DNA of 64,000 bases from Macrostomum lignano (Eukaryota), in NCBI GenBank assembly GCA_002269645.1, contig NIVC01002591.1, forward strand, positions 58,645 through 122,644. Reading direction: 5' to 3'. The translations under genes and the position numbers were made by a program. Shown one piece after another: positions 410-57,129 of the stretch (positions are counted from its first letter, which is position 1; every line of letters starts with the position of its first letter). The notes under the pieces were generated by a model, which was given only the letters and a program-made list of their open reading frames with translations, was not told where the DNA came from and searched no databases.

Positions 410-2948
410 ATGCCAAGCGACTCATTGGGCGCAAGTTTGATGATTCTGTAGTCCAACAAGACATGAAGCATTGGCCTTTCACTGTCATCAATGATTCTGG
501 CAGGCCTAAGATTCAAGTTGAGTACAAAGGTGAAACTAAGACCTTCTTTGCTGAGGAGATTTCTTCCATGGTCTTGACAAAGATGAAGGAGACTGCAGAG
601 GCATACCTGGGAAAGACCGTCACTGATGCTGTTGTCACTGTGCCTGCCTACTTCAATGATAGTCAGCGTCAAGCCACCAAGGATGCTGGTGCCATTGCTG
701 GCCTGAATGTGCTGCGCATCATCAACGAGCCCACAGCTGCTGCCATTGCATATGGTCTAGACAAGAAGAGTGGCCACGAGAGGAATGTGCTCATCTTTGA
801 CCTCGGTGGTGGCACCTTCGATGTGTCCATCCTGACAATCGAAGAGGGCATCTTCGAGGTGAAGTCGACTGCTGGAGACACCCATCTGGGCGGTGAGGAC
901 TTTGACAACAGGATGGTGAACCATTTCATCCAGGAGTTCAAGCGCAAGTACAAGAAGGACATGAGTGACAACAAGCGCGCTGTGAGGCGTCTGCGCACTG
1001 CCTGCGAGAGGGCCAAGCGAACTCTGAGCAGCGCCGCCCAGGCCAACATCGAGATTGACAGCCTATACGAGGGTATTGACTTCTACACGAGCATCACCAG
1101 GGCTCGCTTCGAGGAGCTCAACGCCGACCTGTTCCGCGGCACCCTCGAGCCAGTCGAGAAGTCGCTGCGTGACGCCAAGCTCGACAAGGCGTCCATCAAC
1201 GAGATTGTGCTGGTGGGCGGCTCGACTCGAATCCCGAAGATCCAGAAGCTGCTGCAGGTGAGCAACTTGAAGTTTTTTAGATACTTCTTAGAAATTAAAG
1301 CTTGAGTAGTTAATTCAGCTGTTCTGCGAACTCAGATGATGATATTCTGTAAGGTATTCGCGGTTTCGACAGACGGACCTGCAGTGGGTTCTCTGATGCC
1401 CAAGACCTTCCTTAGTCTGATGCTGAGATTCGCACCTTCAGTAGGATTACTTATTTGCTTATTGTTAGTGTAGGCTAAAGCACTGGCCAGCCAGAGCTCT
1501 CTCAGATGATGATATTCTGTAAGGTATTCGCGGTTTCGACAGACGGACCTGCAGTGGGTTCTCTGATGCCCAAGACCTTCCTTAGTCTGATGCTGAGATT
1601 CGCACCTTCAGTAGGATTACTTATTTGCTTATTGTTAGTGTAGGCTAAAGCACTGGCCAGCCAGAGCTCTCTCAGATGATGATATTCTGTAAGGTATTCG
1701 CGGTTTCGACAGACGGACCTGCAGTGGGTTCTCTGATGCCCAAGACCTTCCTTAGTCTGATGCTGAGATTCGCACCTTCAGTAGGATTACTTATTTGCTT
1801 ATTGTTAGTGTAGGCTAAAGCACTGGCCAGCCAGAGCTCTCTCAGATGATGATATTCTGTAAGGTATTCGCGGTTTCGACAGACGGACCTGCAGTGGGTT
1901 CTCTGATGCCCAAGACCTTCCTTAGTCTGATGCTGAGGCTGGCCCAGTGGGGAGCTCGGAACAAAGCAAAGCAGTCCATCTGTAATCCCCATCGTCATCC
2001 CCACCCGCCATCTCGCAGGACTTCTTCAGCGGCAAGGAGCTCAACAAGTCAATCAACCCGGACGAGGCCGTCGCCTACGGCGCCGCCGTCCAGGCCGCCA
2101 TTCTGCACGGCGACAAGTCCGAGGCGGTGCAGGACCTCCTGCTGCTGGACGTGACGCCACTGTCGCTCGGCATCGAGACCGCTGGCGGCGTGATGACGGC
2201 CCTCATCAAGCGGAACACCACCATCCCCACCAAGCAGACGCAGACGTTCACCACCTACTCGGACAACCAGCCTGGCGTTCTAATCCAGGTGTACGAAGGC
2301 GAGCGCGCCATGACCAAGGACAACAACCTGCTGGGCAAGTTCGAGCTGTCCGGCATCCCGCCGGCTCCGCGCGGAGTCCCCCAGATCGAGGTGACCTTCG
2401 ACATCGACTCCAACGGCATTCTCAACGTGTCCGCCGTGGAGAAAAGCACCAACAAGGAGAACAAGATCACCATCACCAACGACAAGGGCCGTCTCAGCAA
2501 GGAGGACATCGAGCGGATGGTCAACGAGGCCGAGCGCTACAAGGCCGAGGACGACAAGCAGAAGGAGCGCGTCTCGGCCAAGAACTCGCTCGAGAGCTAC
2601 GCCTTCTCCATGCGCCAGACTGTCGAGGACGAGAAGCTCAAGGACAAGATCTCCGAGGACGACAAGAAGACCATCCTGGACAAGTGCAACGACGTCATCA
2701 AGTGGCTCGACGCCAACCAGACCGCCGAGAAGGACGAATACGACCATCAGCAGAAGGAGCTCGAGAAGGTGTGCAACCCCATCATCACCAAGCTGTACCA
2801 GGCCGCTGGCGGAGCCGGTGGAATGCCCGGTAGCATGCCTGGCGGCTTCCCCGGTGGCGCTCCTGGTGCTGGCGCTGCTGGCGGCCAGAGCGGCGGCGGC
2901 GGCGGCAGCGGTGGCGGCTCCGGCCCCACCATCGAGGAGGTCGACTAA
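410..2948 (+). CDS. hsp70: Cytosolic Hsp70/Hsc70, copy A (5'-partial). Exons 410-1257 and 2019-2948; the first exon lies upstream of the window
   Basis: Acceptor ...cacag|ATGCCAAGCGA at 409/410 (phase 1, [10 protein letters not shown]). Donor CTGCAG|gtgagc at 1257/1258, acceptor tctcgcag|GACTTC at 2018/2019, joining [25 protein letters not shown]. Hsp70 signatures [14 protein letters not shown] and [14 protein letters not shown]; GGMPG tail and GPTIEEVD C-terminus; TAA 2946-2948. Confidence 0.97.
1331..1427 (+). ncRNA. U14: U14-type box C/D snoRNA, unit A1 (intronic in Hsp70 A)
   Basis: Box C ATGATGA 1336-1342. Domain A TATTCGCGGTTTC 1355-1367 is antisense to the conserved 18S segment GAAACCGCGAAUG. 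Domain B CCTTCCTTAG 1406-1415 is antisense to 18S CUAAGGAAGG. Box D CTGA 1417-1420; terminal complementarity CTCAG/CTGAG. U14 is known to be hosted in hsc70 introns in vertebrates. Confidence 0.88.
1501..1597 (+). ncRNA. U14: U14-type box C/D snoRNA, unit A2
   Basis: Identical to A1, offset 170 bp. Confidence 0.85.
1671..1767 (+). ncRNA. U14: U14-type box C/D snoRNA, unit A3
   Basis: Identical to A1, offset 340 bp. Confidence 0.85.
1841..1937 (+). ncRNA. U14: U14-type box C/D snoRNA, unit A4 (nearest the 3' splice site)
   Basis: Identical to A1, offset 510 bp. Ends 81 nt upstream of the acceptor at 2018, the usual position for intronic C/D snoRNAs. Confidence 0.88.
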
Positions 2949-3803
2949 AAATAGTGTGAAATCTGACTGGAACATCAATTATCAGTGAAGAATTCTGTTT
3001 GTCAGCTTTGACCCTGGCTTGTACCTGGATTATAATACTTCCCCGAGCTGAAACATTCGCTACATGCGACTTGTCTAATTAATGATCATATGACGGTGTA
3101 CTTTTATTGCTGCTACTCCATCTCCTTGTTCGCCATCACATCCCAGTCTTGTTGATGTCAGAATTTTTGTTCTGAGGAGGATTAATAATTCAATAATAAA
3201 CAAGTTTTGTAATATTAATAACTAAAAATACCAATAATAATAATATAATCTGTTATTTTCGTCATCAAACGTAAGATTTCCTCCCACTATGTCATATAGT
3301 CTCACTTCTGTAGATTATTAAAACCGCTGTGTCATTTTTGGCTTCAGTAGTGAGATTTTTTGTCAGCCTTGTTTTTCTTTCAGCCCTTTTGACTAAAACA
3401 ATTGTTTTTTTGTCCGGGGTTGCATCGCCTTGACCTGCTCCAGTTTTCTACAAACAAATACTTAGCATACCGCATAAGTAAGCATTTCGTCTTCATTTTA
3501 AACCGAAAAAATATACAGTTTGGTTCATTTATTTCCAGGCGTTCTCGCGGCGCTAGGCCTATACTTTTCTAGGCCTTATATTCGGTTTTTCAATTATTCA
3601 GTTTCAAAAATGTCCGGTTTTGGATTATTTTTACTTGGTTAAAGAACGTCGACTGGTTCAGTATGTGGTTCAGTATTTATTACTGTATTACCGACTCTGC
3701 GGACTCATACATGCGCAACCTTGGGAATCACTCGGCCGTTTCTATTGGCAACACACACATGTAATTCGCTATTGGCTGAGAGCAGTCACGTGACTACCAC
3801 ATG

Positions 3804-6087: not shown

Positions 6088-9000
6088 TTAGTCGACCTCC
6101 TCGATGGTGGGGCCGGAGCCGCCACCGCTGCCGCCGCCGCCGCTCTGGCCGCCAGCAGCGCCAGCACCAGGAGCGCCACCGGGGAAGCCGCCAGGCATGC
6201 TACCGGGCATTCCACCGGCTCCGCCAGCGGCCTGGTACAGCTTGGTGATGATGGGGTTGCACACCTTCTCGAGCTCCTTCTGCTGATGGTCGTATTCGTC
6301 CTTCTCGGCGGTCTGGTTGGCGTCGAGCCACTTGATGACGTCGTTGCACTTGTCCAGGATGGTCTTCTTGTCGTCCTCGGAGATCTTGTCCTTGAGCTTC
6401 TCGTCCTCGACAGTCTGGCGCATGGAGAAGGCGTAGCTCTCGAGCGAGTTCTTGGCCGAGACGCGCTCCTTCTGCTTGTCGTCCTCGGCCTTGTAGCGCT
6501 CGGCCTCGTTGACCATCCGCTCGATGTCCTCCTTGCTGAGACGGCCCTTGTCGTTGGTGATGGTGATCTTGTTCTCCTTGTTGGTGCTTTTCTCCACGGC
6601 GGACACGTTGAGAATGCCGTTGGAGTCGATGTCGAAGGTCACCTCGATCTGGGGGACTCCGCGCGGAGCCGGCGGGATGCCGGACAGCTCGAACTTGCCC
6701 AGCAGGTTGTTGTCCTTGGTCATGGCGCGCTCGCCTTCGTACACCTGGATTAGAACGCCAGGCTGGTTGTCCGAGTAGGTGGTGAACGTCTGCGTCTGCT
6801 TGGTGGGGATGGTGGTGTTCCGCTTGATGAGGGCCGTCATCACGCCGCCAGCGGTCTCGATGCCGAGCGACAGTGGCGTCACGTCCAGCAGCAGGAGGTC
6901 CTGCACCGCCTCGGACTTGTCGCCGTGCAGAATGGCGGCCTGGACGGCGGCGCCGTAGGCGACGGCCTCGTCCGGGTTGATCGACTTGTTGAGCTCCTTG
7001 CCGCTGAAGAAGTCCTGCGAGATGGCGGGTGGGGATGACGATGGGGATTACAGATGGACTGCTTTGCTTTGTTCTGAGCTCCCCACTGGGCCAGCCTTCG
7101 CATCAGACTAAGGAAGGTCTTGGGCATCAGAGAACCCACTGCAGGTCCGTCTGTCGAAACCGCGAATACCTTACAGAATATCATCATCTGAGAGAGCTCT
7201 GGCTGGCCAGTGCTTTAGCCTACACTAACAATAAGCAAATAAGTAATCCTACTGAAGGTGCGAATCTCAGCATCAGACTAAGGAAGGTCTTGGGCATCAG
7301 AGAACCCACTGCAGGTCCGTCTGTCGAAACCGCGAATACCTTACAGAATATCATCATCTGTGAGAGCTCTGGCTGGCCAGTCATACATGCGCAACAGTCG
7401 GCCGAGTCGGCCGACTGATTTGGCAGCCAACCAAGGAAGTCGCAAAAAATGCCCACCCAAAAAATACCCACGCAGTAGTACTAAGTAGCTGACGAGGCAT
7501 TTTTGCCTGATAAGACAGTCATAGTTACTCCCGCCGTTTACCCAAAGTTGCGTTAATTTTGCTTTAGGGTTTTTTTTACATGTAAGTCGCATTTTTGGCC
7601 AAAAACTACGTCGCATTTTTGTTAAAACTAAGTCGCACGGCCGACCGAATTTTGGACGTTGCGCATGTATGTGGCCAGTGCTTTAGCCTACACTAACAAT
7701 AAGCAATAAGTAATCCTACTGCAGGTGCGAATCTCAGCATCAGACTAAGGAAGGTCTTGGGCATCAGAGAACCCACTGCAGGTCCGTCTGTCGAAACCGC
7801 GAATACCTTACAGAATATCATCATCTGAGTTCGCAGAACAGCTGAATTAACTACTCAAGCTTTAATTTCTAAGAAGTATCTAAAAAACTTCAAGTTGCTC
7901 ACCTGCAGCAGCTTCTGGATCTTCGGGATTCGAGTCGAGCCGCCCACCAGCACAATCTCGTTGATGGACGCCTTGTCGAGCTTGGCGTCACGCAGCGACT
8001 TCTCGACTGGCTCGAGGGTGCCGCGGAACAGGTCGGCGTTGAGCTCCTCGAAGCGAGCCCTGGTGATGCTCGTGTAGAAGTCAATACCCTCGTATAGGCT
8101 GTCAATCTCGATGTTGGCCTGGGCGGCGCTGCTCAGAGTTCGCTTGGCCCTCTCGCAGGCAGTGCGCAGACGCCTCACAGCGCGCTTGTTGTCACTCATG
8201 TCCTTCTTGTATTTGCGCTTGAACTCCTGGATGAAATGGTTCACCATCCTGTTGTCAAAGTCCTCACCGCCCAGATGGGTGTCTCCAGCAGTCGACTTCA
8301 CCTCGAAGATGCCCTCCTCGATTGTCAGGATGGACACATCGAAGGTGCCACCACCGAGGTCAAAGATGAGCACATTCCTCTCGTGGCCACTCTTCTTGTC
8401 TAGACCATATGCAATGGCAGCCGCTGTGGGCTCATTGATGATGCGCAGCACATTCAGGCCAGCAATGGCACCAGCATCCTTGGTGGCTTGACGCTGACTA
8501 TCATTGAAGTAGGCAGGCACAGTGACAACAGCATCAGTGACGGTCTTTCCCAGGTATGCCTCTGCAGTCTCCTTCATCTTTGTCAAGACCATGGAAGAGA
8601 TCTCTTCAGCAAAGAAGCTTTTAGTTTCACCTTTGAACTCAACTTGAATTTTTGGCCGACTGCCATCATTGACAACAGTGAAGGGCCAATGCTTCATGTC
8701 TTGTTGGACAACAGAATCATCAAACTTGCGTCCAATGAGTCGCTTTGCATCTGTAAGTGAATTAATTAATAGTAAAATATAAGCTTTGAAATTTGCAAAA
8801 CTAAAGCTAGGCTAGGCCTAATGACGGCAATTGTAAAGAATAGCTATGCCTCAGGATTTATAAGCAATATATAGGACATTTTAGACAGGTTTTAAAACTT
8901 TTGGGACTGTGGATTTATAATAAAATTACTTATTTCACTCGACTTAATTTAAGCCACAACTTAAACGACAGGTCAAAGCAGATATTCTTGGTCAATCGCC

Positions 9001-9444: not shown

Positions 9445-12400
9445 AAAATGACAAAATTACGATAACGATTGTCGTTATTTTACAAAGCCGGGCCCTTTTA
9501 CCTGTCTTCTTGTACTCACCCCTAAGAGAATATACGTGTAAAATAGGCGTAATGGCTCATTTAGTTTTATACTGCCAAGGGAAAGTGGAAACGTTAAAAT
9601 GATTTGACTTTTTTAATCTATGATATAGTTTGCGTTTAAATTGATTTATTCCCAGCAACATTGAAAAGTCTGTGGTCACCACTCGCCACTTTTGAGAGAA
9701 TACAGGTAAAGTCTGTCAAACCTTGCGAGTGACGCAACTCAGCTACGCCCCGCCCACGGCAGACTTGCTTGAGTTTTTGGGGAATGAAGTGGGTGGAGCG
9801 GTGTAAAAAGCTACATGTACCCCGAGATCAGTTTTCTCGTATTTTTTATTTCAGAGTAGTCCACAGAGAAGTGCTCTCACTGGCGCATAAAGTGGCGACT
9901 TAATTGCTGAGTATATGTTTATATGGAGCAAAGGTTATTTTTTACTAGCTAGTTGGTAATAATTACAATTTTTTGCAAAAAATTAGTAAACAATTACAAT
10001 ATTTGACTGGAAAACTATGAAATTAGAGCTTCGCATATCAGGATTTATTTATACTATAAATTTTGTACCCCGTGATGCTGAACTACTCTTAAATTTCGTA
10101 CAATTTATTATTAATTTTACAGAATTTTAAAGGCCCAGTACTGGCGCAACCTTACCCCTAGCTGCAACCTCAAATTCATTAAGGGGGGCAGACCCTATAT
10201 GGCTTGCTTATTTACATGCTTCCCAGAACGCACCCAGGCGTGGAGGGGTGCGTTCTTGCCACATTCGCCCACAACCTTCGGGCTTCAGCGGAGACCAGAA
10301 AAAATAAATAGGTGACCAAGCTCATGTTCGCCAAAATACTGTAAGATTACGATACACAGTTCTTTCGCTCGGAAATTTCTTTGGGGCAAGCGTGTACCCA
10401 TTGTGTAGAGTCCGGAATTAAGTTTTATAGACGTGCAAAGGTATAAGAATATGTTATTTTAAATGTTGTAATGGTTATTTGCAGCTTAGTTCTGTTAAAA
10501 TAAAATCTTTAATATTCTTAAACATACAATTGCAGTTTGCAGTCAACAATTATGTATCACTACGATTTTTTAAATGAAAAGGGCTGTGTTTTTTCGGAAA
10601 AATATTTTTAAGCATGCTGGCTTGATAATCCAAATTGCCTCGAACATGGTTACGTTACATGGGGTTCATGTTAACAGATAACTGCTTATTTGAGGTTTTA
10701 TTTACTTCGGTATTAAGCAAGTACAGGTCTGTCTGCACATAGTTTTTGCCTGCTTTTAGGGACAGTTCTCTTCATTTCGATATTTTTCGTAGAGATGTAG
10801 GGGCCTATTTTTATTTTGTATTTCGACAACGAATCAAAAATTTATGGACCGCTTTTTCTGGATATTGTCTATATATAGTTAACAGTGAGTAGGCATATGG
10901 CCTAGACATAGAGTTTCAACGAGCCCAGATTTTTGCTCAAGCCGAGCTCTAGTCGAGTAGCATGACCAAAAAACAAATCCGAGTAGGGCCTTAGTTGAGT
11001 TAAGGCAGGCATCGACATCGCCTGCCTTAGGCCTAGTTTTTGGTTATGGCTAATATTAGACTAGATAATAAATAAAATAATAAATTCCATTTTAGTATCT
11101 ATCTCTCTTAATTACTACCAATAGCAATAGGAAATGAGTGAAATATATAGACCTAGCCTAGCCTAGGCTTATTATCTATCTAGGCCCCAATTTGTGGTTT
11201 TGTGGTTGGGCATGTATGATATTGCTGCTCCAGTTTTACCAATCATCTTCAAATTTGACACAAACAATCTTATCTACTTTGACACATTTGTATAAAATTT
11301 TGAGTCTCAAAGTTGATATTGAAAGGTGTTGTGCACTTTTAAAGTTAGTCTGCTTTTTGTTAGCATAATAACCATCCCCACCTCTGCCTCTCTTCTTATC
11401 TGGCCAGATGTGTCCAAGGGATTTACAACTGACTAACTTTAGGCTGCCATAAGTTTGCTTTAGGCCTACATAAAGCAATTGATTTCAAAATTGACATAAT
11501 TCTTTATTGACTTATTCTTTGTCTAAATGTTAAGTCTCAACTCTGTAACTCAATCAGGATAGAAACTGTAAGCATTTAAAGTTTGTCTGCTTTTTCTATT
11601 GTTGTGTCACTTTTTTATTCCCTATAGATAGAGGAAAGGGTCAAGTTCGACTCAAGTAATAAGGATAAGTATATAAAGTAAATATAGAGTGTTTTGGAAT
11701 AAAATTTGTTTATAGCTTTCTTTGCACCATTGTGGAGAGGCTACATTTAGCTATTAGGCCCTACAGTTAAGTGAAAGATTTCTAACCACTATCTGATTGA
11801 GAGTACCTATTCTATCCTACAGTCTTTTCAAGCACTTGAGCTAATGCTATAGTTGATAAAACATGAGATGAAAGAGAACATAAGATATTTAAAGGGGGAA
11901 TGTAAAGAAAAGAAAATAGGCCTAAAGGAAAAGAAAGAAGAGATAAAAGATAAAATAGTAGAGAAGAAGCAAAGAAGAGGGGAAAGATAAGAGACTAGAG
12001 ATTAAAAAGAAGAGAGAAGAGAGGAAAGATAAAAAAGAGATAAGATGAGAAAGAAGAGAGCAGAGAACAGATAAGTTTTAAAGGACCTAAGGAATAGAGA
12101 GAAAGGCAGAGATCAGAGACTAGAGTTTGCCAGTGCATGCTTTAGACAAATGTTACCTGTCAATCCGTGGCAACCCTAATCAACAAGATCAATGCTTGCT
12201 TCAAATTTTAATCTAACACAAATTAATTCCAATTTTTTCAACTCTATCCCAACTATTAATAAACTTTTTTGAGTATGGCTTCAGATTTTAGATTGCATGC
12301 AAAAAGTTGCAGGGATTAGAATTTGGCAGGTTTAAAATCTACAGGTTTCAACAGCTTGTATAAAATAAAAATAAAGGTTTTCAACATTTATAACTCAAAA

Positions 12401-36153: not shown

Positions 36154-39100
36154 TGTCAGTTTGGCTACCAATATTACCATCTAGTGTCAGTTTGGCTACC
36201 AATTTTACCCTCTAGTGTCAGTTTGGCTACCAATTTTAGCCTCTAGTGTCAGTTTGGCTACCAATTTTACCCTCTAGTGTCAGTTTGGCTACCAATATTA
36301 CCATCTAGTGTCAGTTTGGCTACCAATTTTAGCCTCTAGTGTCAGTTTGGCTACCAATATTACCATCTAGTGTCAGTTTGGCTACCAATTTTAGCCTCTA
36401 GTGTCAGTTTGGCTACCAATTTTACCCTCTAGTGTCAGTTTGGCTACCAATTTTACCCTCTAGTGTCAGTTTGGCTACTAATTTTACCCTCTAGTGTCAG
36501 TTTGGCTACCATTTTACCCTCTAGTGTCAGTTTGGCTACCTATTTTACCCTCTAGTGTCAGTTTGGCTACCTATTTTACCCTCTAGTGTCAGTTTGGCTA
36601 CCAATTTTACCCTCTAGTGTCAGTTTGGCTACCAATTTTACCCTCTAGTGTCAGTTTGGCTACCAATTTTACCATCTAGTGTCAGTTTGGCTACCAATTT
36701 TACCCTCTAGTGTCAGTTTGGCTACCAATTTTACCCTCTAGTGTCAGTTTGGCTACCAATTTTACCCTCTAGTGTCAGTTTGGCTACCAATTTTACCCTC
36801 TAGTGTCAGTTTGGCTACCAACTTTAGCCTCTAAGTGTCAGTTTGGCTACCATTTTACCCTCTAGTGTCAGTTTGGCTACCTATTTTACCCTCTAGTGTC
36901 AGTTTGGCTACCAATTTTACCCTCTAGTGTCAGTTTGGCTACCAATTTTACCCTCTAGTGTCAGTTTGGCTACCAATTTTACCATCTAGTGTCAGTTTGG
37001 CTACCAATTTTACCCTCTAGTGTCAGTTTGGCTACCAATTTTACCCTCTAGTGTCAGTTTGGCTACCAATTTTACCCTCTAGTGTCAGTTTGGCTACCAA
37101 TTTTACCCTCTAGTGTCAGTTTGGCTACCAATTTTACCCTCTAGTGTCAGTTTGGCTACCAACTTTAGCCTCTAAGTGTCAGTTTGGCTACCATTTTACC
37201 CTCTAGTGTCAGTTTGGCTACCTATTTTACCCTCTAGTGTCAGTTTGGCTACCAATTTTACCCTCTAGTGTCAGTTTGGCTACCAATTTTACCCTCCAGT
37301 GTCAGTTTGGCTACCAATTTTACCCTCTAGTGTCAGTTTGGCTACCAATTTTACCCTCCAGTGTCAGTTTGGCTACCAATTTTACCCTCTAGTGTCAGTT
37401 TGGCTACCAATTTTACCCTCTAGTGTCAGTTTGGCTACCAATTTTACCCTCTAGTGTCAGTTTGGCTACCAATTTTACCCTCTAGTGTCAGTTTGGCTAC
37501 CAATTTTAACCTCTAGTGTCAGTTTGGCTACCAATTTTACCCTCTAGTGTCAGTTTGGCTACCAATTTTACCCTCTAGTGTCAGTTTGGCTACCAATTTT
37601 ACCCTCTAGTGTCAGTTTGGCTACCAATTTTACCCTCTAGTGTCAGTTTGGCTACCAATTTTACCCTCTCGTGTCAGTTTGGCTACCAATTTTACCCTCT
37701 AGTGTCAGTTTGGCTACCAATTTTACCCTCTAGTGTCAGTTTGGCTACTAATTTTACCCTCTATTGTCAACTTGACTACCAATTTTACCCTCTAGTGTCG
37801 ACTTGACTACCAATTTTACCCTCTCGTGTCAGTTTGGCTACCAATTTTACCCTCTAGTGTCAGTTTGGCTACCAATTTTACCCTCTAGTATCAACTTGAC
37901 TACCAATTTTACCAAACAGTGTCAGTTTGGCTACCAATTTTACCCTCTAGTGTCAGTTTGGCTACCAATTTTACCCTCTAGTGTCAGTTTGGCTACCAAT
38001 TTTACCCTCCAGTGTCAGTTTGGCTACTAATTTTACCCTCTATTGTCAACTTGACTACCAATTTTACCCTCTAGTGTCGACTTGACTACCAATTTTACCC
38101 TCTCGTGTCAGTTTGGCTACCAATTTTACCCTCTAGTGTCAGTTTGGCTACCAATTTTACCCTCTAGTGTCAGTTTGGCTACCAATTTTACCCTCTAGTG
38201 TCAGTTTGGCTTCCAATTTTACCCTCAAGTGTCAGTTTGGCTACCAATTTTACCCTCTAGTGTCAGTTTGGCTACCAATTTTACCCTCTAGTGTCAGTTT
38301 GGCTACCAATTTTACCCTCTAGTGTCAGTTTGGCTACCAATTTTACCCTCCAGTGTCAGTTTGGCTACTAATTTTACCCTCTAGTGTCAGTTTGGCTACC
38401 AATTTTACCCTCCAGTGTCAGTTTGGCTACCAATTTTACCCTCTAGTGTCAGTTTGGCTACCAATTTTACCCTCCAGTGTCAGTTTGGCTACTAATTTTA
38501 CCCTCTATTGTCAACTTGACTACCAATTTTACCCTCTAGTGTCGACTTGACTACCAATTTTACCCTCTCGTGTCAGTTTGGCTACCAATTTTACCCTCTA
38601 GTGTCAGTTTGGCTACCAATTTTACCCTCTAGTATCAACTTGACTACCAATTTTACCAAACAGTGTCAGTTTGGCTACCAATTTTACCATCTAGTGTCAG
38701 TTTGGCTACCAATTTTACCCTCTAGTGTCAGTTTGGCTACCAATTTTACCCTCTAGTGTCAGTTTGGCTACCAATTTTACCCTCTAGTGTCGGTTTGGCT
38801 ACCAATTTTACCCTCAAGTGTCAGTTTGGCTACCAATTTTACCCTCTAGTGTCGGTTTGGCTACCAATTTTACCCTCTGGTGTCAGTTTGGCTACCAATT
38901 TTACCCTCTAGTGTCAGTTTGGCTACCAATTTTACCCTCTAGTGTCAGTTTGGCTACCAATTTTTCCCTCCAGTGTCAGTTCGGCTACCAATTTTTCCCT
39001 CCAGTGTCAGTTCGGCTACCAGTTTTGCCCTCCCGTGTCAGTTCGGCTACCAATTTTGCCCTCCCGTGTCAGTTTGGCTACCAATTTTTCCCTCTAGTGT

Positions 39101-39280
39101 CAGTTTGGCTACCAATTTTACCCTCTAGTGTCAGTTTGGCTACCAATTTTTCCCTCCAGTGTCAGTTCGGCTACCAGTTTTGCCTTCCCGTGTCAGTTTG
39201 GCTACCAATTTTACCCTCTAGTGTCAGTTTGGCTTCCAATTTTACCCTCTAGTGTCAGTTTGGCTACCAATTTTACCCTG
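36154..39280. repeat. 31-bp satellite (TGTCAGTTTGGCTACCAATTTTACCCTCTAG), ~100 copies
   Basis: Period of 31; recurring private variants show block duplications. Confidence 0.97.
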
Positions 39281-39749: not shown

Positions 39750-42700
39750 TAGTCAGCCATCTTGTCAGCAGGAATTGGTGTGCAATGCATTTCTTGTCAG
39801 CAGGAATTGTTGTGCAATGCATTCCTTGTCAGCAGGAATTGGTGTGCAATGCATTTCTAGTCAGCCATCTTGTCAGCAGGAATTGGTGTGCAATGCATTT
39901 CTTGTCAGCAGGAATTGGTGTGCAATGCATTCCTTGTCAGCAGGAATTGGTGTACAATGCATTCCTTGTCAGCAGGAATTGGTGTACAATGCATTCCTTG
40001 TCAGCAGGAATTGGTGTGCAATGCATTCCTTGTCAGCAGGAATTGGTGTACAATGCATTCCTTGTCAGCAGGAATTGGTGTGCAATGCATTCCTTGTCAG
40101 CAGGAATTGGTGTGCAATGCATTTCTAGTCAGCCGGAATTGGTGTGCAATGCATTCCTTGTCAGTAGGAATTGGTGTGCAATGCATTTCTTGTCAGCAGG
40201 AATTGGTGTACAATGCATTCCTTGTCAGCAGGAATTGGTGTGCAATGCATTCCTTGTCAGCAGGAATTGGTGTGCAATGCATTCCTTGTCAGCAGGAATT
40301 GGTGTGCAATGCATTCCTTGTCAGCAGGAATTGGTGTGCAATGCATTCCTTGTCAGCAGGAATTGGTGTGCAATGCATTCCTTGTCAGTAGGAATTGGTG
40401 TGCAATGCATTCCTTGTCAGCAGGAATTGGTGTGCAATGCATTCCTTGTCAGCAGGAATTGGTGTGCAATGCATTTCTTGTCAGCAGGAATTGGTGTGCA
40501 ATGCATTTCTAGTCAGCCATCTTGTCAGCAGGAATTGGTGTGCAATGCATTCCTTGTCAGCAGGAATTGGTGTGCAATGCATTTCTTGTCAGCAGGAATT
40601 GGTGTGCAATGCATTTCTTGTCAGCAGGAATTGGTGTGCAATGCATTCCTTGTCAGCAGGAATTGGTGTGCAATGCATTTCTTGTCAGCAGGAATTGGTG
40701 TACAATGCATTCCTTGTCAGCAGGAATTGGTGTGCAATGCATTCCTTGTCAGCAGGAATTGGTGTGCAATGCATTTCTTGTCAGCAGGAATTGGTGTGCA
40801 ATGCATTCCTTGTCAGCAGGAATTGGTGTGCAATGCATTTCTAGTCAGCCATCTTGTCAGCAGGAATTGGTGTGCAATGCATTCCTTGTCAGCAGGAATT
40901 GGTGTGCAATGCATTTCTTGTCAGCAGGAATTGGTGTGCAATGCATTTCTTGTCAGCAGGAATTGGTGTACAATGCATTCCTTGTCAGCAGGAATTGGTG
41001 TGCAATGCATTCCTTGTCAGCAGGAATTGGTGTGCAATGCATTCCTTGTCAGCAGGAATTGGTGTGCAATGCATTCCTTGTCAGCAGGAATTGGTGTGCA
41101 ATGCATTCCTTGTCAGCAGGAATTGGTGTGCAATGCATTTCTTGTCAGCCATCTTGTCAGCAGGAATTGGTGTGCAATGCATTCCTTGTCAGCAGGAATT
41201 GGTGTGCAATGCATTCCTTGTCAGCAGGAATTGGTGTGCAATGCATTCCTTGTCAGCCGGAATTGGTGTGCAATGCATTCCTTGTCAGCAGGAATTGGTG
41301 TACAATGCATTCCTTGTCAGCAGGAATTGGTGTGCAATGCATTCCTTGTCAGCAGGAATTGGTGTGCAATGCATTCCTTGTCAGCAGGAATTGGTGTGCA
41401 ATGCATTCCTTGTCAGCAGGAATTGGTGTGCAATGCATTCCTTGTCAGCAGGAATTGGTGTGCAATGCATTCCTTGTCAGCAGGAATTGGTGTGCAATGC
41501 ATTCCTTGTCAGCAGGAATTGGTGTGCAATGCATTTCTTGTCAGCAGGAATTGGTGTACAATGTATTCCTTGTCAGCAGGAATTGGTGTGCAATGCATTC
41601 CTTGTCAGCAGGAATTGGTGTGCAATGCATTCCTTGTCAGCAGGAATTGGTGTGCAATGCATTTCTTGTCAGCAGGAATTGGTGTGCAATGCATCCCTTG
41701 TCAGCAGGAATTGGTGTGCAATGCATTTCTTGTCAGCAGGAATTGGTGTACAATGCATTCCTTGTCAGCAGGAATTGTTGTGCAATGCATTCCTTGTCAG
41801 CAGGAATTGGTGTGCAATGCATTCCTTGTCAGCCATCTTGTCAGCAGGAATTGTTGTGCAATGCATTCCTTGTCAGCCATCTTGTCAGCAGGAATTGGTG
41901 TGCAATGCATTCCTTGTCAGCAGGAATTGTTGTGCAATGCATTCCTTGTCAGCAGGAATTGGTGTGCAATGCATTCCTTGTCAGCAGGAATTGGTGTGCA
42001 ATGCATTCCTTGTCAGCAGGAATTGTTGTGCAATGCATTCCTTGTCAGCAGGAATTGGTGTGCAATGCATTCCTTGTCAGCAGGAATTGGTGTGCAATGC
42101 ATTCCTTGTCAGCAGGAATTGGTGTACAATGCATTCCTTGTCAGCAGGAATTGGTGTGCAATGCATTCCTTGTCAGCAGGAATTGGTGTGCAATGCATTC
42201 CTTGTCAGCAGGAATTGGTGTGCAATGCATTTCTTGTCAGCAGGAATTGGTGTACAATGCATTCCTTGTCAGCAGGAATTGGTGTGCAATGCATTCCTTG
42301 TCAGCAGGAATTGGTGTGCAATGCATTCCTTGTCAGCAGGAATTGGTGTGCAATGCATTCCTTGTCAGCAGGAATTGGTGTGCAATGCATTTCTTGTCAG
42401 CAGGAATTGGTGTACAATGCATTCCTTGTCAGCAGGAATTGGTGTGCAATGCATTCCTTGTCAGCAGGAATTGGTGTGCAATGCATTTCTTGTCAGCAGG
42501 AATTGGTGTGCAATGCATTCCTTGTCAGCAGGAATTGGTGTGCAATGCATTCCTTGTCAGCCATCTTGTCAGCAGGAATTGGTGTGCAATGCATTCCTTG
42601 TCAGCAGGAATTGGTGTGCAATGCATTCCTTGTCAGCAGGAATTGGTGTGCAATGCATTCCTTGTCAGCAGGAATTGGTGTGCAATGCATTCCTTGTCAG

Positions 42701-42780
42701 CAGGAATTGGTGTGTAATGCATTCCTTGTCAGCAGGAATTGGTGTGCAATGCATTCCTTGTCAGCAGGAATTGGTGTACA
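39750..42780. repeat. 32-bp satellite (GTCAGCAGGAATTGGTGTGCAATGCATTCCTT), ~90-95 copies
   Basis: Period of 32; the unit has no plus-strand stop codon, hence the 685-1053-aa pseudo-ORFs. Confidence 0.97.
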
Positions 42781-43021
42781 TGTGCATTCAGTCACACGTA
42801 CATTTTCTACATTGTAAAACATTCCAAGATGTGCGGTATTGCTTGGGATACTGTCAAAAAAACATTAAGCATTGTGTCCATTTTCGAATTAATAAATATG
42901 TATATATTTGATTAGCTACTCAATAATAAATCGCTCCATAATCTCTTAATTAAATAAGTAAATAATAGTTCCGTGATCAAACTGCGCGCAATCAATTCGA
43001 TTCAAGTAGAGAATGTGTGCA

Positions 43022-50047: not shown

Positions 50048-53000
50048 AGATTTGGCGCTCACTGACTCAGATTTGGCGCTCCCAGTCTCAGATTTGGCGC
50101 TTCTCTGACTCAGATTTGGTACCCCTCTGTCTCAGATTTGGTACCCCTCTGACTCAGATTTGGCGCTCCTCTGTCTCAGATTTGGCGCCCCTCTGACTCA
50201 GATTTGGCGCCCCTCTGTCTCAGATTTGGCGCTCCTCTATCTCAGATTTGGCGCTCCTCTGACTCAGATTTGGCGCTCCTCTGACTCAGATTTGGCGCTC
50301 CTCTATCTCAGATTTGGCGCCCCTCTGACTCAGATTTGGCGCTCCTCTGACTCAGATTTGGTACCCCTCTGTCTAAGATTTGGCGCCCCTCTGTCTCAGA
50401 TTTGGTACCCTCTGTCTCAGATTTGGCGCCCCTCTGTCTCAGATTTGGTACCCCTCTGTCTCAGATTTGGCGCCCCTCTGTCTCAGATTTGGCGCCCCTC
50501 TGACTCAGATTTGGCGCCCCTCTGACTCAGATTTGGTACCCCTCTGTCTCAGATTTGGCGCCCCTCTGTCTCAGATTTGGCGCCCCTCTGACTCAGATTT
50601 GGCGCCCCTCTGACTCAGATTTGGCGCCCCTCTGTCTCAGATTTGGCGCTCCTCTATCTCAGATTTGGCGCCCCTCTGACTCAGATTTGGCGCTCCTCTG
50701 ACTCAGATTTGGCGCTCCTCTGACTCAGATTTGGCGCTCCTCTGACTCAGATTTGGCGCCCCTCTGTCTCAGATTTGGCGCTCCTCTGACTCAGATTTGG
50801 CGCTCCTCTGACTCAGATTTGGCGCTCCTCTATCTCAGATTTGGCGCCCCTCTGACTCAGATTTGGCGCTTCTCTGACTCAGATTTGGCGCTCCTCTGAC
50901 TCAGATTTGGCGCTCCTCTATCTCAGATTTGGCGCCCCTCTGACTCAGATTTGGCGCTCCTCTGACTCAGATTTGGCGCTTCTCTGACTCAGATTTGGTA
51001 CCCCTCTGTCTCAGATTTGGTACCCCTCTGACTCAGATTTGGCGCTCCTCTGTCTCAGATTTGGCGCCCTCTGACTCAGATTTGGCGCCCCTCTGTCTCA
51101 GATTTGGCGCTCCTCTATCTCAGATTTGGCGCTCCTCTGACTCAGATTTGGCGCTCCTCTGACTCAGATTTGGCGCTCCTCTATCTCAGATTTGGCGCCC
51201 CTCTGACTCAGATTTGGCGCTCCTCTGACTCAGATTTGGTACCCCTCTGTCTCAGATTTGGCGCCCCTCTGTCTCAGATTTGGTACCCCTCTGTCTCAGA
51301 TTTGGCGCCCCTCTGTCTCAGATTTGGTACCCCTCTGTCTCAGATTTGGCGCCCCTCTGTCTCAGATTTGGCGCCCCTCTGACTCAGATTTGGCGCCCCT
51401 CTGACTCAGATTTGGTACCCCTCTGTCTCAGATTTGGCGCCCCTCTGTCTCAGATTTGGCGCCCCTCTGACTCAGATTTGGCGCCCCTCTGACTCAGATT
51501 TGGCGCCCCTCTGTCTCAGATTTGGCGCTCCTCTATCTCAGATTTGGCGCCCCTCTGACTCAGATTTGGCGCTCCTCTGACTCAGATTTGGCGCTCCTCT
51601 ATCTCAGATTTGGCGCTCCTCTGACTCAGATTTATCGCCCCTCTGTCTCAGATTTGGCGCTCCTCTGACTCAGATTTGGCGCTCCTCTGACTCAGATTTG
51701 GCGCTCCTCTATCTCAGATTTGGCGCCCCTCTGACTCAGATTTGGCGCTTCTCTGACTCAGATTTGGCGCTCCTCTATCTCAGATTTGGCGCCCCTCTGA
51801 CTCAGATTTGGCGCTCCTCTGACTCAGATTTGGCGCCCCTCTGACTCAGATTTGGCGCTCCTCTGACTCAGATTTGGCGCTCCTCTGACTCAGATTTGGC
51901 GCCCCTCTGTCTCAGATTTGGCGCCCCTCTGTCTCAGATTTGGCGCCCCTCTGACTCAGATTTGGCGCCCCTCTGACTCAGATTTGGCGCTCCTCTATCT
52001 CAGATTTGGCGCCCCTCTGACTCAGATTTGGCGCTCCTCTGACTCAGATTTGGTACCCCTCTGTCTCAGATTTGGCGCCCCTCTGTCTCAGATTTGGTAC
52101 CCCTCTGTCTCAGATTTGGCGCCCCTCTGTCTCAGATTTGGTACCCCTCTGTCTCAGATTTGGCGCCCCTCTGTCTCAGATTTGGCGCCCCTCTGACTCA
52201 GATTTGGCGCCCCTCTGACTTAGATTTCGTACCCCTCTGTCTCAGATTTGGCGCCCCTCTGACTCAGATTTGGCGCCCCTCTGACTCAGATTTGGCGCCC
52301 CTCTGACTTAGATTTCGTACCCCTCTGTCTCAGATTTGGCGCCCCTCTGTCTCAGATTTGGCGCCCCTCTGACTCAGATTTGGCGCCCCTCTGACTCAGA
52401 TTTGGTACCCCTCTGTCTCAGATTTGGCGCCCCTCTGTCTCAGATTTGGCGCCCCTCTGACTCAGATTTGGCGCCCCTCTGACTCAGATTTGGCGCCCCT
52501 CTGTCTCAGATTTGGCGCTCCTCTATCTCAGATTTGGCGCCCCTCTGTCTCAGATTTGGCGCCCCTCTGTCTCAGATTTGGTACCCCTCTGTCTCAGATT
52601 TGGCGCCCCTCTGTCTCAGATTTGGCGCCCCTCTGACTCAGATTTGGCGCCCCTCTGACTTAGATTTCGTACCCCTCTGTCTCAGATTTGGCGCCCCTCT
52701 GACTCAGATTTGGCGCCCCTCTGACTCAGATTTGGTACCCCTCTGTCTCAGATTTGGCGCTCCTCTGACTCAGATTTGGTACCCCTCTGTCTCAGATTTG
52801 GCGCCCCTCTGTCTCAGATTTGGTACCCCTCTGTCTCAGATTTGGCGCCCCTCTGACTCAGATTTGGCGCTCCTCTATCTCAGATTTGGCGCTCCTCTGA
52901 CTCAGATTTGGCGCCCCTCTGTCTCAGATTTGGCGCTCCTCTGACTCAGATTTGGCGCTCCTCTGACTCAGATTTGGCGCTCCTCTGACTCAGATTTGGC

Positions 53001-56000: not shown

Positions 56001-56582
56001 TTTGGCGCTCCTCTGACTCAGATTTGGCGCTCCTCTGACTCAGATTTGGCGCCCCTCTGACTCAGATTTGGCGCTCCTCTGACTCAGATTTGGTACCCCT
56101 CTGTCTCAGATTTGGCGCCCCTCTGTCTCAGATTTGGTACCCCTCTGTCTCAGATTTGGCGCCCCTCTGTCTCAGATTTGGTACCCCTCTGTCTCAGATT
56201 TGGCGCCCCTCTGTCTCAGATTTGGCGCCCCTCTGACTCAGATTTGGCGCCCCTCTGACTCAGATTTGGTACCCCTCTGTCTCAGATTTGGCGCCCCTCT
56301 GTCTCAGATTTGGCGCCCCTCTGACTCAGATTTGGCGCCCCTCTGACTCAGATTTGGCGCCCCTCTGTCTCAGATTTGGCGCTCCTCTATCTCAGATTTG
56401 GCGCCCCTCTGACTCAGATTTGGCGCTCCTCTGACTCAGATTTGGCGCTCCTCTATCTCAGATTTGGCGCTCCTCTGACTCAGATTTGGCGCCCCTCTGT
56501 CTCAGATTTGGCGCCCCTCTGTCTCAGATTTGGCGCCCCTCTGACTCAGATTTGGCGCCCCTCTGACTCAGATTTGGCGCCC
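50048..56582. repeat. 22-bp satellite (TCAGATTTGGCGCCCCTCTGTC and variants), ~6.5 kb, roughly 300 units
   Basis: Period of 22; a few variable positions; large internal block duplications. Confidence 0.97.
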
Positions 56583-57129
56583 CCATTAGCTAAACGCGGT
56601 ACAAAAAAACAGATTTCTCGATTTTCTCTCGATTTTCTCTGCTTTTAAAGCATGGCTACTAATAGCTTGAGCATAGTCGAGCACAGAGAGCGCTCAGCTG
56701 CGTGATGCCGACTTGGCTAGAGAGAAGGACAGCGAGGGAAAAGCAGAGGAACACAGGCAGCTGAGAGAGAGAGGGAGAGAGAGAGAGAGTGAGTGAATTT
56801 GTGGCGGTCCCGCGCGGCCCATTTCGTGCGACGGGGCCCGAGCGCATTTAAATTATTAATTCCCTTTTTTTCTCTGTCCCGCCGTGTCGCCGACTAAATA
56901 GAGAAGCCCCTAGAAAGCTTTCGTAGAAATTACCGAAAATACTCCTGTGCCGCAGTCCCTGCTCTATCCTTTCCTCTGTCGCTGTCTGCAGGCTTTATCC
57001 ATTTTCCCGCTTTTATGTCTTCGTCCGAATCTCTGGGATAAAAATTGTTCATTACAAAATTACCGAATCGCAGAAGGCGCTGTTTTTCTGTTTTTTTTGT
57101 CTGAAGGCGTCATTTTTGGATGTTAGTCG

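What the first reader, a model, noticed from the sequence alone, without database searches (positions are those of the whole stretch)
1404..1427. U14 domain-B guide is shifted 3 nt relative to box D: possible retargeted 2'-O-methylation
Seen: the 3' end reads CCTTCCTTAG-T-CTGA-TG-CTGAG in six of the seven units (TGCGAAG follows box D in B3). Established: canonical U14 ends CCUUCCUUGGAUGU-CUGA and by the D+5 rule methylates the C of 18S ACAU-C-(C/U)AAGG (yeast Cm414, human Cm462). Inference: if the first CTGA is box D, the AUG is missing and D+5 lands on the second A of CUAAGG, 3 nt downstream of the canonical site. Alternatively the second CTGA is box D and TCTG is a 4-nt bulge in the guide. 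Unit B3 keeps the first CTGA but has lost the second, which mildly favours the first reading. This could be a U14 with altered or lost methylation function that keeps the domain-A role in 18S processing.
Basis: partly seen in the sequence, partly recalled or inferred. Interest (0 to 1): 0.7.

Follow-up and report, generated by a model that had tools for sequence, protein, structure and literature searches.

The report
Flatworm U14 snoRNA with shifted guide
An intron of the flatworm Macrostomum lignano's hsc70 genes holds tandem copies of U14, a small nucleolar RNA needed to make 18S ribosomal RNA, and these copies lack 3 bases just before box D, so they cannot place the usual rRNA methyl group and would put it 3 bases downstream or nowhere.

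Summary
Seven 97-nt units lie in the same intron of two convergent hsc70 genes. Six end CCTTCCTTAG-T-CTGA-TG-CTGAG, and B3 ends ...CTGATGCGAAG. The window is Macrostomum lignano contig NIVC01002591.1. Two paralogous loci add 10 units with the same 3' end.

The units are real U14 homologues, with box C, domain A, a C'-like box, domain B and box D in order. Rfam SNORD14 scores only 19.7 bits (gathering score 64). A model I built from 27 diverse canonical U14s finds all 17 units at 31-35 bits (E about 1e-4) and nothing else.

All 115 canonical U14s recovered from metagenomes have exactly 4 nt between CCUUCCUURG and CUGA. M. lignano has 1. Both models align the first CUGA as box D with a 3-nt deletion, and only that CUGA gives a box C/D stem II.

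So this U14 cannot guide the canonical Cm (yeast C414). With the first CUGA as box D, D+5 falls on the second A of CUAAGG. Whether that A is methylated, or methylation is simply lost, could not be tested. The host 18S sequence, RNA ends and methylation map were out of reach.

The terminal stem is also out of the usual k-turn register. This is a new variant of a known kind, with a precedent in fly U14, which lacks domain B.

The parts
1331..1427 (+). U14 unit A1 (97 nt). 5' stem strand CUCAG 1331-1335; box C AUGAUGA 1336-1342; domain A AUUCGCGGUUUCGAC 1356-1370; C'-like UGAUGC 1394-1399; domain B CCUUCCUUAG 1406-1415; U 1416; first CUGA (proposed box D) 1417-1420; UG 1421-1422; CUGAG (3' stem strand, contains the second CUGA) 1423-1427
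1501..1597 (+). U14 unit A2, identical to A1
1671..1767 (+). U14 unit A3, identical to A1
1841..1937 (+). U14 unit A4, identical to A1; ends 81 nt before the 3' splice site
7733..7829 (-). U14 unit B1, identical to A1
7266..7362 (-). U14 unit B2; 5' stem strand reads CACAG instead of CUCAG
7096..7192 (-). U14 unit B3; 3' end is CUGAUGCGAAG, so the first CUGA is kept while the second CUGA and the 3' stem strand are lost
1258..2018 (+). Host intron of hsc70 gene A (761 nt, phase 0 after codon 351). Flanking exons are 410-1257 and 2019-2948; the gene's 5' end lies outside the window
7015..7902 (-). Host intron of hsc70 gene B (888 nt). Gene B exons are 9292-9088, 8750-7903 and 7014-6088, giving 659 aa
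7382..7671 (.). MITE-like insertion in the spacer between B1 and B2. It has 14-bp terminal inverted repeats and an 8-bp target-site duplication TGGCCAGT. It is not part of the snoRNA

Best explanation
The units are working copies of the U14 box C/D snoRNA of Macrostomum lignano. They would be released from an hsc70 intron that carries 2-4 tandem copies. Box C is AUGAUGA and box D is the first CUGA. Domain A (AUUCGCGGUUUC) would keep U14's conserved job of pairing with the 5' region of 18S during 18S processing. Relative to all other U14s sampled, 3 nt are missing between domain B and box D. That leaves a 10-nt guide (CCUUCCUUAG) at D+2 to D+11. By the D+5 rule, fibrillarin would then act on the nucleotide paired to the U at D+5. 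That nucleotide is the second A of 18S CUAAGGAAGG, 3 nt 3' of the canonical C (yeast C414). This U14 therefore cannot make the canonical Cm. It most likely either adds a new Am at +3 or merely pairs there. The second CUGA belongs to a 5-bp terminal stem (CUCAG/CUGAG) used for folding and processing and is not box D. Shown here: the identity as U14, the 3-nt difference, its presence in all 17 copies, and which CUGA aligns to box D. Inferred: expression, snoRNP assembly, the host 18S sequence and the methylation outcome. The confidence given (0.45) is for the full statement including a new Am at +3. My confidence that this is a U14 homologue unable to guide the canonical Cm is about 0.85.
For: Identity: Rfam SNORD14 aligns end to end, though weakly. 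Model R1, built from 27 diverse canonical U14s, hits exactly the 17 M. lignano units at 31-35 bits, E 1e-4 to 5e-4 in 148 kb. It hits nothing in five other hsc70 loci. Box D choice: both models align the first CUGA with box D and place a 3-nt deletion in GGAUGU. The GU before the first CUGA matches the canonical GU-CUGA. Only the first CUGA gives the usual stem II with box C (G-C, A-U, U.G), which the RNAfold minimum-energy structure also shows. It also gives CA/UG in the canonical k-turn register. With the second CUGA, internal units have no terminal stem longer than 2 bp in any register. Variation: among the 17 copies there were about 4 mutation events. One hits the R position of box C (A to G, still R). 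Two hit the terminal stem or second CUGA (U2 to A in 3 copies; B3). One hits an internal loop. None hits box C core, domain A, domain B or the first CUGA. Rarity: 0 of 115 canonical U14s have the 1-nt spacing. Placement: the last unit ends 81-86 nt before the 3' splice site, which from my own knowledge is the range reported as optimal for intronic C/D snoRNAs in mammals. [quoted passage not shown] Yeast U14 guides 18S-Cm414 and pairs through domains A and B (PMC6300602).
Against: The Rfam score is far below the gathering score (19.7 versus 64). The CUCAG/CUGAG stem starts 2 nt after the first CUGA and 0 nt before box C. The dominant canonical register is 1 and 0, seen in 54 of 101 unique U14s. 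The fold is therefore a symmetric 5x5 loop rather than the asymmetric k-turn loop. A canonical k-turn would have only a 2-bp C-stem. A 10-bp guide is at the short end of known functional guides (my own knowledge). The host 18S was not seen, so CUAAGG is inferred only from the guide. All copies are near-identical recent duplicates, so there is no covariation. Selection cannot be separated from gene conversion: the spacers are also nearly invariant, while the outer intron flanks differ by 6.5%. Expression was not tested.
Confidence: 0.45

Rival explanations
1. The RNA and box D are the same, but guided methylation is simply lost. Domain B survives only as a 10-bp pairing or chaperone element (or has not yet decayed), and U14 keeps only its 18S-processing role. 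The canonical C is either unmethylated or guided by another snoRNA, as proposed for Drosophila.
For: Fly U14 lacks domain B, and an unrelated snoRNA was predicted to guide that site. Tetrahymena U14 candidates also lack domain B (PMC6315972). The off-register terminal stem could misplace the core proteins. From my own knowledge, domain B is dispensable for growth in yeast.
Against: A perfect 10-nt complement sits right next to an intact CUGA with a good stem II. That is what a working guide looks like, so methylation at D+5 would be the default outcome if the snoRNP binds. No alternative guide for the canonical C exists in the window or in the two paralogous loci, though that covers only about 100 kb of the genome.
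Confidence: 0.33
2. The second CUGA is the true box D. The guide is then CCUUCCUUAG-UCUG-AUG, either with a 4-nt bulge or matched by a diverged host 18S. In the first units the k-turn could form with CAGAUGA as box C and the UGCGAA/UUCGCA outer stem.
For: CCUUAG-[UCUG]-AUG-CUGA resembles the canonical UUAG-type ending CCUUAG-AUGC-CUGA seen in 4 metagenome U14s. First units have a 6-bp outer stem. The sequence shared by all units runs exactly through CUGAG.
Against: Internal and last units have no terminal stem longer than 4 bp in any register with this box D. Stem II would be a single G-C pair. Both covariance models pick the first CUGA. Even with the bulge ignored, the canonical C would sit at D+4, not D+5. 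From my own knowledge, guide bulges are not tolerated.
Confidence: 0.1
3. The units are decaying or non-functional U14 copies (pseudogenes), amplified by unequal crossing-over. The working U14 lies elsewhere in the genome.
For: The Rfam score is sub-threshold. The box D region is non-canonical. All copies are recent duplicates, so conservation proves little. Copy number varies between loci: 4/3, 2/2 and 3/3.
Against: Box C, domain A, domain B and the first CUGA are intact in all 17 copies across three loci whose intron flanks have diverged by 6.5% plus indels. The host is a highly expressed gene type known to host U14 (PMC7277114). The units are suitably placed relative to the splice sites.
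Confidence: 0.07

Closest known systems
U14 / SNORD14 (Rfam RF00016; yeast snR128): a dual-function box C/D snoRNA
   Same: It has box C (RUGAUGA), domain A (AUUCGCRGUUUC) complementary to 18S helix 6, an internal hairpin, a C'-like UGAUGC, domain B (CCUUCCUURG) complementary to 18S helices 13-14, and box D CUGA preceded by GU. It is hosted in an hsc70 intron, as in human, mouse and rat.
   Different: Three nucleotides are missing between domain B and box D (1 nt instead of 4). The complementarity is 10 nt instead of 14. The terminal stem starts 2 nt after box D and contains a second CUGA. There are 2-4 tandem copies in one intron. The host intron lies at a different position (after codon 351) from the vertebrate U14 introns. 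The Rfam score is below the gathering score.
Drosophila U14 (Yuan et al. 2003, as cited in PMC6315972) and the Tetrahymena U14-like snoRNAs TtnuCD25/32
   Same: These are U14 homologues in which the methylation-guide function of domain B has been separated from the processing function of domain A.
   Different: In those cases domain B is absent altogether. Here domain B is kept as a perfect 10-mer but sits in the wrong register relative to box D. That predicts a shifted target rather than no target.
Ordinary methylation-guide box C/D snoRNAs (D+5 rule)
   Same: A 10-nt antisense element lies directly upstream of CUGA, so the rule predicts one specific target nucleotide.
   Different: The predicted target (equivalent to human 18S A465 and yeast A417 by my own numbering from Cm462/Am468 and Cm414/Am420) is not a methylation site known to me in yeast or human. 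My literature search for such a site found nothing relevant.

Membership tests
U14 / SNORD14 | Reaches the Rfam RF00016 gathering score (64 bits) | tested here: not met
   No hit at gathering threshold. Best hit is 19.7 bits, E 0.38, in a 771-nt scan.
U14 / SNORD14 | Box C RUGAUGA near the 5' end and box D CUGA near the 3' end | tested here: met
   AUGAUGA at unit positions 6-12 (GUGAUGA in one L004 copy). CUGA at positions 87-90 and again at 93-96.
U14 / SNORD14 | Domain A complementary to 18S helix 6 (consensus AUUCGCAGUUUCCAC) | tested here: met
   AUUCGCGGUUUCGAC at positions 26-40. The G variant also occurs in canonical metagenome U14s (L029, L088).. Pairing to the host 18S itself was not testable.
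U14 / SNORD14 | Domain B, a 13-14-nt complement to 18S ACAUC(C/U)AAGGAAGG ending 1 nt before box D, so that D+5 pairs with the C | tested here: not met
   Only CCUUCCUUAG (10 nt) is present, and 1 nt rather than 4 separates it from CUGA. All 115 canonical U14s have 4 nt. D+5 is a U.
U14 / SNORD14 | Overall order and spacing of elements, scored by an independent covariance model | tested here: met
   Model R1, built from 27 metagenome U14s, scores all 17 units at 31-35 bits, E about 1e-4, full length 1-113. There are no other hits in 148 kb. Caveat: the training set was chosen with a domain A + domain B pattern that these units also match.
U14 / SNORD14 | Terminal stem in k-turn register (5' stem-N-RUGAUGA ... 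CUGA-3' stem) | tested here: not met
   The canonical register (1,0) gives only 2 bp (CA/UG). The 5-6-bp stem lies at register (0,2). In the reference set, 54 of 101 unique U14s have their best stem at (1,0) and 1 of 101 at (0,2).
U14 / SNORD14 | Required for 18S processing; guides Cm at yeast C414 / human C462 | not testable with these tools
   This needs knock-down and RiboMeth-seq in M. lignano. The yeast function is cited from PMC6300602.
Intron-encoded vertebrate-type U14 in hsc70 | Located in hsc70 introns homologous to mammalian introns 5, 6 and 8 | tested here: not met
   The host is an hsc70 gene (99% identity to M. lignano Hsp70). The intron is phase 0 after codon 351. Haliotis, Helobdella, lizard and Schistosoma hsc70 have no intron there. 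The metagenome U14s L088 and L031 do sit at the positions after about aa 373 and before aa 442.

The most novel reading that the evidence does not exclude
M. lignano U14 is a natural retargeted guide. A 3-nt deletion moved fibrillarin's target from the near-universal 18S Cm (yeast C414) to an A three nucleotides downstream in helix 14, a site I do not know to be methylated in yeast or human. U14's essential processing role was kept. This would be a living example of a methylation site migrating by guide slippage within one snoRNA. The hsc70-U14 host association would also have been re-established in a non-homologous intron as a multi-copy array.
Probability: 0.4. Interest if true: 0.6.

Novelty: new variant of a known kind. 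Interest (0 to 1): 0.45.

Why it matters
U14 is one of the few essential, near-universal snoRNAs, and its Cm site in 18S helix 14 is conserved from yeast to human. Here domain B is retained but out of register with box D. That makes a natural test of two questions: how strictly the D+5 rule and k-turn geometry fix the methylated nucleotide, and whether the conserved Cm is dispensable in an animal. It also extends the classic hsc70-U14 host relationship to a flatworm, though in a different intron and as a tandem array. This bears on how snoRNAs move between introns and how several can be released from one intron. M. lignano can be cultured, treated with RNAi and made transgenic, so the predictions are directly testable.

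Tried and rejected
**Related flatworm and invertebrate hsc70 loci.** I fetched Schistosoma mattheei (L005), Haliotis (L006) and Helobdella (L008). None contains a U14 by Rfam, regex or my model, so they gave no close comparator.

**Vertebrate reference loci.** Neither Xenopus tropicalis (L129) nor the lizard Lerista (L130) hsc70-type gene carries a U14. Canonical sequences came from metagenome contigs instead.

**Other Macrostomum species.** The only close hit (P0021, 94% identity) is a spliced Logan transcript with no intron.

**Host 18S.** It is not in the window. No tool searches eukaryotic genomes by DNA. I considered querying the protein database with a translated 18S segment (frames worked out). 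I rejected this because the organism could not be identified among thousands of near-identical hits, so the cost was not justified.

**Literature.**
- Nothing on M. lignano snoRNAs.
- A text search for the CUAAGG form of the 18S sequence found only protist and myxozoan primers.
- A search for a known Am at the predicted site found nothing relevant.

**Other checks.**
- The second-CUGA reading was examined in all stem registers and with an alternative box C register (CAGAUGA). It is viable only for the first unit of each array (and reasoning).
- Evidence for purifying selection from paralogue divergence is inconclusive, because the spacers are also nearly invariant.
- A search for another guide to the canonical C (GAUGN-CUGA type) in the window, L003 and L004 found none.
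Full report
**What is there**

The window holds two convergent hsc70 genes.
- Gene A is on the + strand. Its exons in the window are 410-1257 and 2019-2948, and its 5' end lies outside the window.
- Gene B is on the - strand, with exons 9292-9088, 8750-7903 and 7014-6088, giving 659 aa.

The gene B protein is 99% identical to a Macrostomum lignano Hsp70 (P0018). The locus fetched for P0018 is the same DNA: assembly GCA_002269645.1, contig NIVC01002591.1. The host is therefore the free-living flatworm M. lignano.

Each gene has a phase-0 intron after codon 351. It spans 1258-2018 in gene A and 7902-7015 in gene B. These introns carry 97-nt units: four in gene A, with a 170-nt period and 100% identity, and three in gene B. 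A 290-bp MITE-like insertion splits the spacer between B1 and B2.

**Check of the observation**

CCTTCCTTAGTCTGA occurs 7 times, against 0.25 expected by chance. Six units end ...CCTTCCTTAG-T-CTGA-TG-CTGAG. Unit B3 ends ...CTGATGCGAAG.

Two paralogous M. lignano loci have the same layout of two convergent hsc70 genes:
- L003 (contig NIVC01000064.1) has 2+2 units.
- L004 (contig NIVC01000065.1) has 3+3 units.

That makes 17 units in all, and 16 share the same 3' end. Only five positions vary among the 17:
- position 2, U to A in 3 units;
- position 6, A to G in 1 unit, which still fits R of RUGAUGA;
- position 44, C to A in 1 unit;
- positions 94 and 95, in B3 only.

**Identity**

The unit reads, in order:

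| Unit positions | Element |
|---|---|
| 1-5 | CUCAG (5' stem strand) |
| 6-12 | AUGAUGA (box C) |
| 26-40 | AUUCGCGGUUUCGAC (domain A) |
| about 47-61 | a hairpin |
| 64-69 | UGAUGC (C'-like box) |
| 76-85 | CCUUCCUUAG (domain B) |
| 86 | U |
| 87-90 | CUGA (first) |
| 91-92 | UG |
| 93-97 | CUGAG (3' stem strand, contains the second CUGA) |

Rfam finds nothing at gathering threshold. A permissive scan aligns SNORD14 end to end at only 19.7 bits, against a gathering score of 64.

To get an independent yardstick, I scanned metagenome contigs for TTCGCRGTTTC-N(30-60)-CCTTCCTTRG. I reduced the true U14s to 27 representatives sharing no more than 85% identity and built a covariance model from them (R1). 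R1 finds exactly the 17 M. lignano units at 31-35 bits (E 1e-4 to 5e-4). It finds nothing in the hsc70 loci of Schistosoma, Haliotis, Helobdella, Xenopus or a lizard.

One caveat applies. The training set was selected with a pattern that these units also match, so part of the score is circular. Box C, the C' box, box D and the spacing are independent of that pattern.

I conclude that these are U14 homologues. Their internal sequence resembles the animal-type U14s in the sample (CCACAGA..., UGAUGCC).

**The anomaly is real and rare**

In 115 U14-like metagenome hits, the gap between CCUUCCUURG and CUGA is always 4 nt, including the six with UUAG. The single 1-nt case in that scan has no box C and lies in what looks like coding sequence. 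M. lignano has 1 nt.

Both covariance models align the first CUGA to box D and open a 3-nt gap inside GGAUGU.

**Which CUGA is box D?**

For the k-turn layout I used my own recollection of the archaeal L7Ae-box C/D co-crystal RNA, checked against the sample. In that layout:
- the first GA of RUGAUGA forms the sheared pairs with the GA of CUGA;
- the second GA of box C pairs with the C of CUGA and the nucleotide before it (stem II);
- the terminal C-stem starts directly after CUGA and one nucleotide before R.

In the reference set this (1,0) register is the best stem in 54 of 101 unique U14s, with stems of 5-8 bp.

With the first CUGA:
- stem II is G-C, A-U, U.G, as in canonical U14, and RNAfold also predicts it;
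- the (1,0) register gives only CA/UG;
- the 5-bp CUCAG/CUGAG stem sits at register (0,2) and closes a symmetric 5x5 loop.

With the second CUGA:
- stem II is a single G-C;
- internal units have no terminal stem longer than 2 bp;
- only the first unit of each array gains a 6-bp UGCGAA/UUCGCA outer stem, at register (5,2).

A6 to G keeps R. The U2 to A change and the B3 change hit the terminal stem or second CUGA, which then looks like the least constrained part. With about four mutation events, this is only mild support.

I put the first CUGA at about 0.8 and the second at about 0.1. The off-register stem remains unexplained under either reading.

**Consequence for the guide**

With the first CUGA, D+1 is U86. 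D+2 to D+11 are G85 back to C76, which complement 5'-CUAAGGAAGG-3'. D+5 is U82, which pairs with the second A. This is 3 nt 3' of the C that U14 methylates in yeast, 18S-Cm414 in helix 14 (PMC6300602).

By my own numbering, the predicted site is equivalent to yeast A417 and human A465. It lies between the known Cm414/Cm462 and Am420/Am468 sites. I know of no methylation there, and a literature search found none.

With the second CUGA, the canonical C would be at D+4 (bulge ignored) or D+8 (bulge counted).

So this U14 cannot guide the canonical Cm under either reading. No other guide for that C exists in the window or in the two paralogous loci. The rest of the genome could not be searched.

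**Retargeted or lost?**

This cannot be decided here. Three points favour retargeting:
- the 10-mer is perfect;
- it directly abuts an intact CUGA with a good stem II;
- domain A on the same RNA provides extra pairing.

Three points favour loss:
- the guide is short;
- the terminal motif is off-register;
- domains A and B are known to be separable. Fly U14 lacks domain B and another snoRNA was predicted to take over its site, and the Tetrahymena candidates also lack it (PMC6315972).

My split is roughly 0.45 retargeted, 0.33 lost, 0.10 second CUGA and 0.07 dead copies. The small remainder covers readings I did not enumerate.

**Limits**

- The host 18S was not available, so CUAAGG (rather than CCAAGG) and GAAACCGCGAAU are inferred from the guide sequences alone.
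- All 17 copies are recent duplicates. Between the window and L003, the outer intron flanks differ by 10 substitutions and two indels over 154 nt, while the units differ at 0 positions. But the 73-nt spacers differ at only 1-2 positions. Gene conversion therefore explains the data as well as selection does.
- Expression, RNA ends and methylation are untested.

**Context**

U14 in hsc70 introns is classic for human, mouse and rat (PMC7277114). Two metagenome U14s, L088 and L031, also sit in hsc70 introns, after about aa 373 and before aa 442. By my recollection of the HSPA8 exon structure, these are the positions of mammalian introns 5 and 6.

The M. lignano intron after codon 351 is not present in Haliotis, Helobdella, lizard or Schistosoma hsc70. 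The association here is therefore in a non-homologous intron.

Several snoRNAs in one intron would need cleavage in the spacers to release them all (an inference). The first and last units carry external complementary flanks, UGCGAA/UUCGCA and GGCCAGCC/GGCUGGCC. The last unit ends 81-86 nt before the 3' splice site.

**Verdict**

The sequence-level interpretation is supported, and the functional outcome is open. This is a new variant of a known kind, of moderate interest, and directly testable in a tractable animal.

Noticed in passing
window 7382-7671 (TSD at 7374-7381 and 7672-7679); also 3706-3719 and 11205-11218: A 290-bp MITE-like element sits in the spacer between U14 units B1 and B2. 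It has perfect 14-bp terminal inverted repeats (CATACATGCGCAAC) and an 8-bp target-site duplication TGGCCAGT, which looks hAT-like. Further copies of the repeat end occur elsewhere in the window.
   Followed up: partly
window 1258-2018 and 7015-7902; L003 and L004: The number of U14 copies per intron differs between paralogous hsc70 genes: 4 and 3 in the window, 2 and 2 in L003, 3 and 3 in L004. Several snoRNAs share one intron, so releasing them all would need cleavage in the spacers.
   Followed up: partly
window 1325-1330/1428-1434 (unit A1) and 1826-1833/1938-1945 (unit A4): The first unit of each array is flanked by UGCGAA...UUCGCA, which extends the terminal stem to 11 bp with one bulge. 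The last unit is flanked by GGCCAGCC...GGCUGGCC. The sequence shared by all units is exactly the 97 nt from CUCAG to CUGAG, so the array is not a simple tandem duplication of local sequence.
   Followed up: partly
unit positions 62-69 and 86-93 (A1: window 1392-1399 and 1416-1423): The 8-mer UCUGAUGC occurs twice in each unit, once at the C'-like box and once at the first CUGA. This could be chance (roughly 7%) or a trace of how the 3' end was remodelled.
   Followed up: no
window 1257/1258 and 7903/7902 (intron after codon 351, phase 0): The host intron position is not shared with hsc70 of Haliotis, Helobdella, a lizard or Schistosoma. It also differs from the intron positions that hold U14 in metagenome loci L088 and L031. 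The hsc70-U14 association therefore sits in a non-homologous intron.
   Followed up: partly
L088 1762-1823 (-) and L031 23-80 (+): Two metagenome contigs carry a U14 inside hsc70 introns. L088 has CCGA in place of box D CUGA and a 7-bp terminal stem.
   Followed up: no
L129 (Xenopus tropicalis) and L130 (Lerista edwardsae): These hsc70-type genes, both with introns, contain no U14 by Rfam, regex or my model. Hosting of U14 by hsc70 is therefore not universal among vertebrate hsc70 paralogues.
   Followed up: partly
window about 13700-63100: Most of the rest of the window consists of long minisatellite arrays with periods of 4-64 nt. Examples are 36154-39279 (31-mer x101), 39761-42789 (32/64-mer) and 50048-56583 (22-mer x298).
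   Followed up: no
L005 11254-11331 (-): An Rfam mir-3492 precursor (63.5 bits, above its gathering score) lies within the annotated Schistosoma mattheei hsp70 gene range, on the opposite strand.
   Followed up: no
window 410-2948 versus 6088-8750: The two convergent hsc70 genes are almost identical from exon 2 onward. Their last exons are very GC-rich, while the introns and flanks are AT-rich, which suggests ongoing gene conversion between the pair.
   Followed up: no
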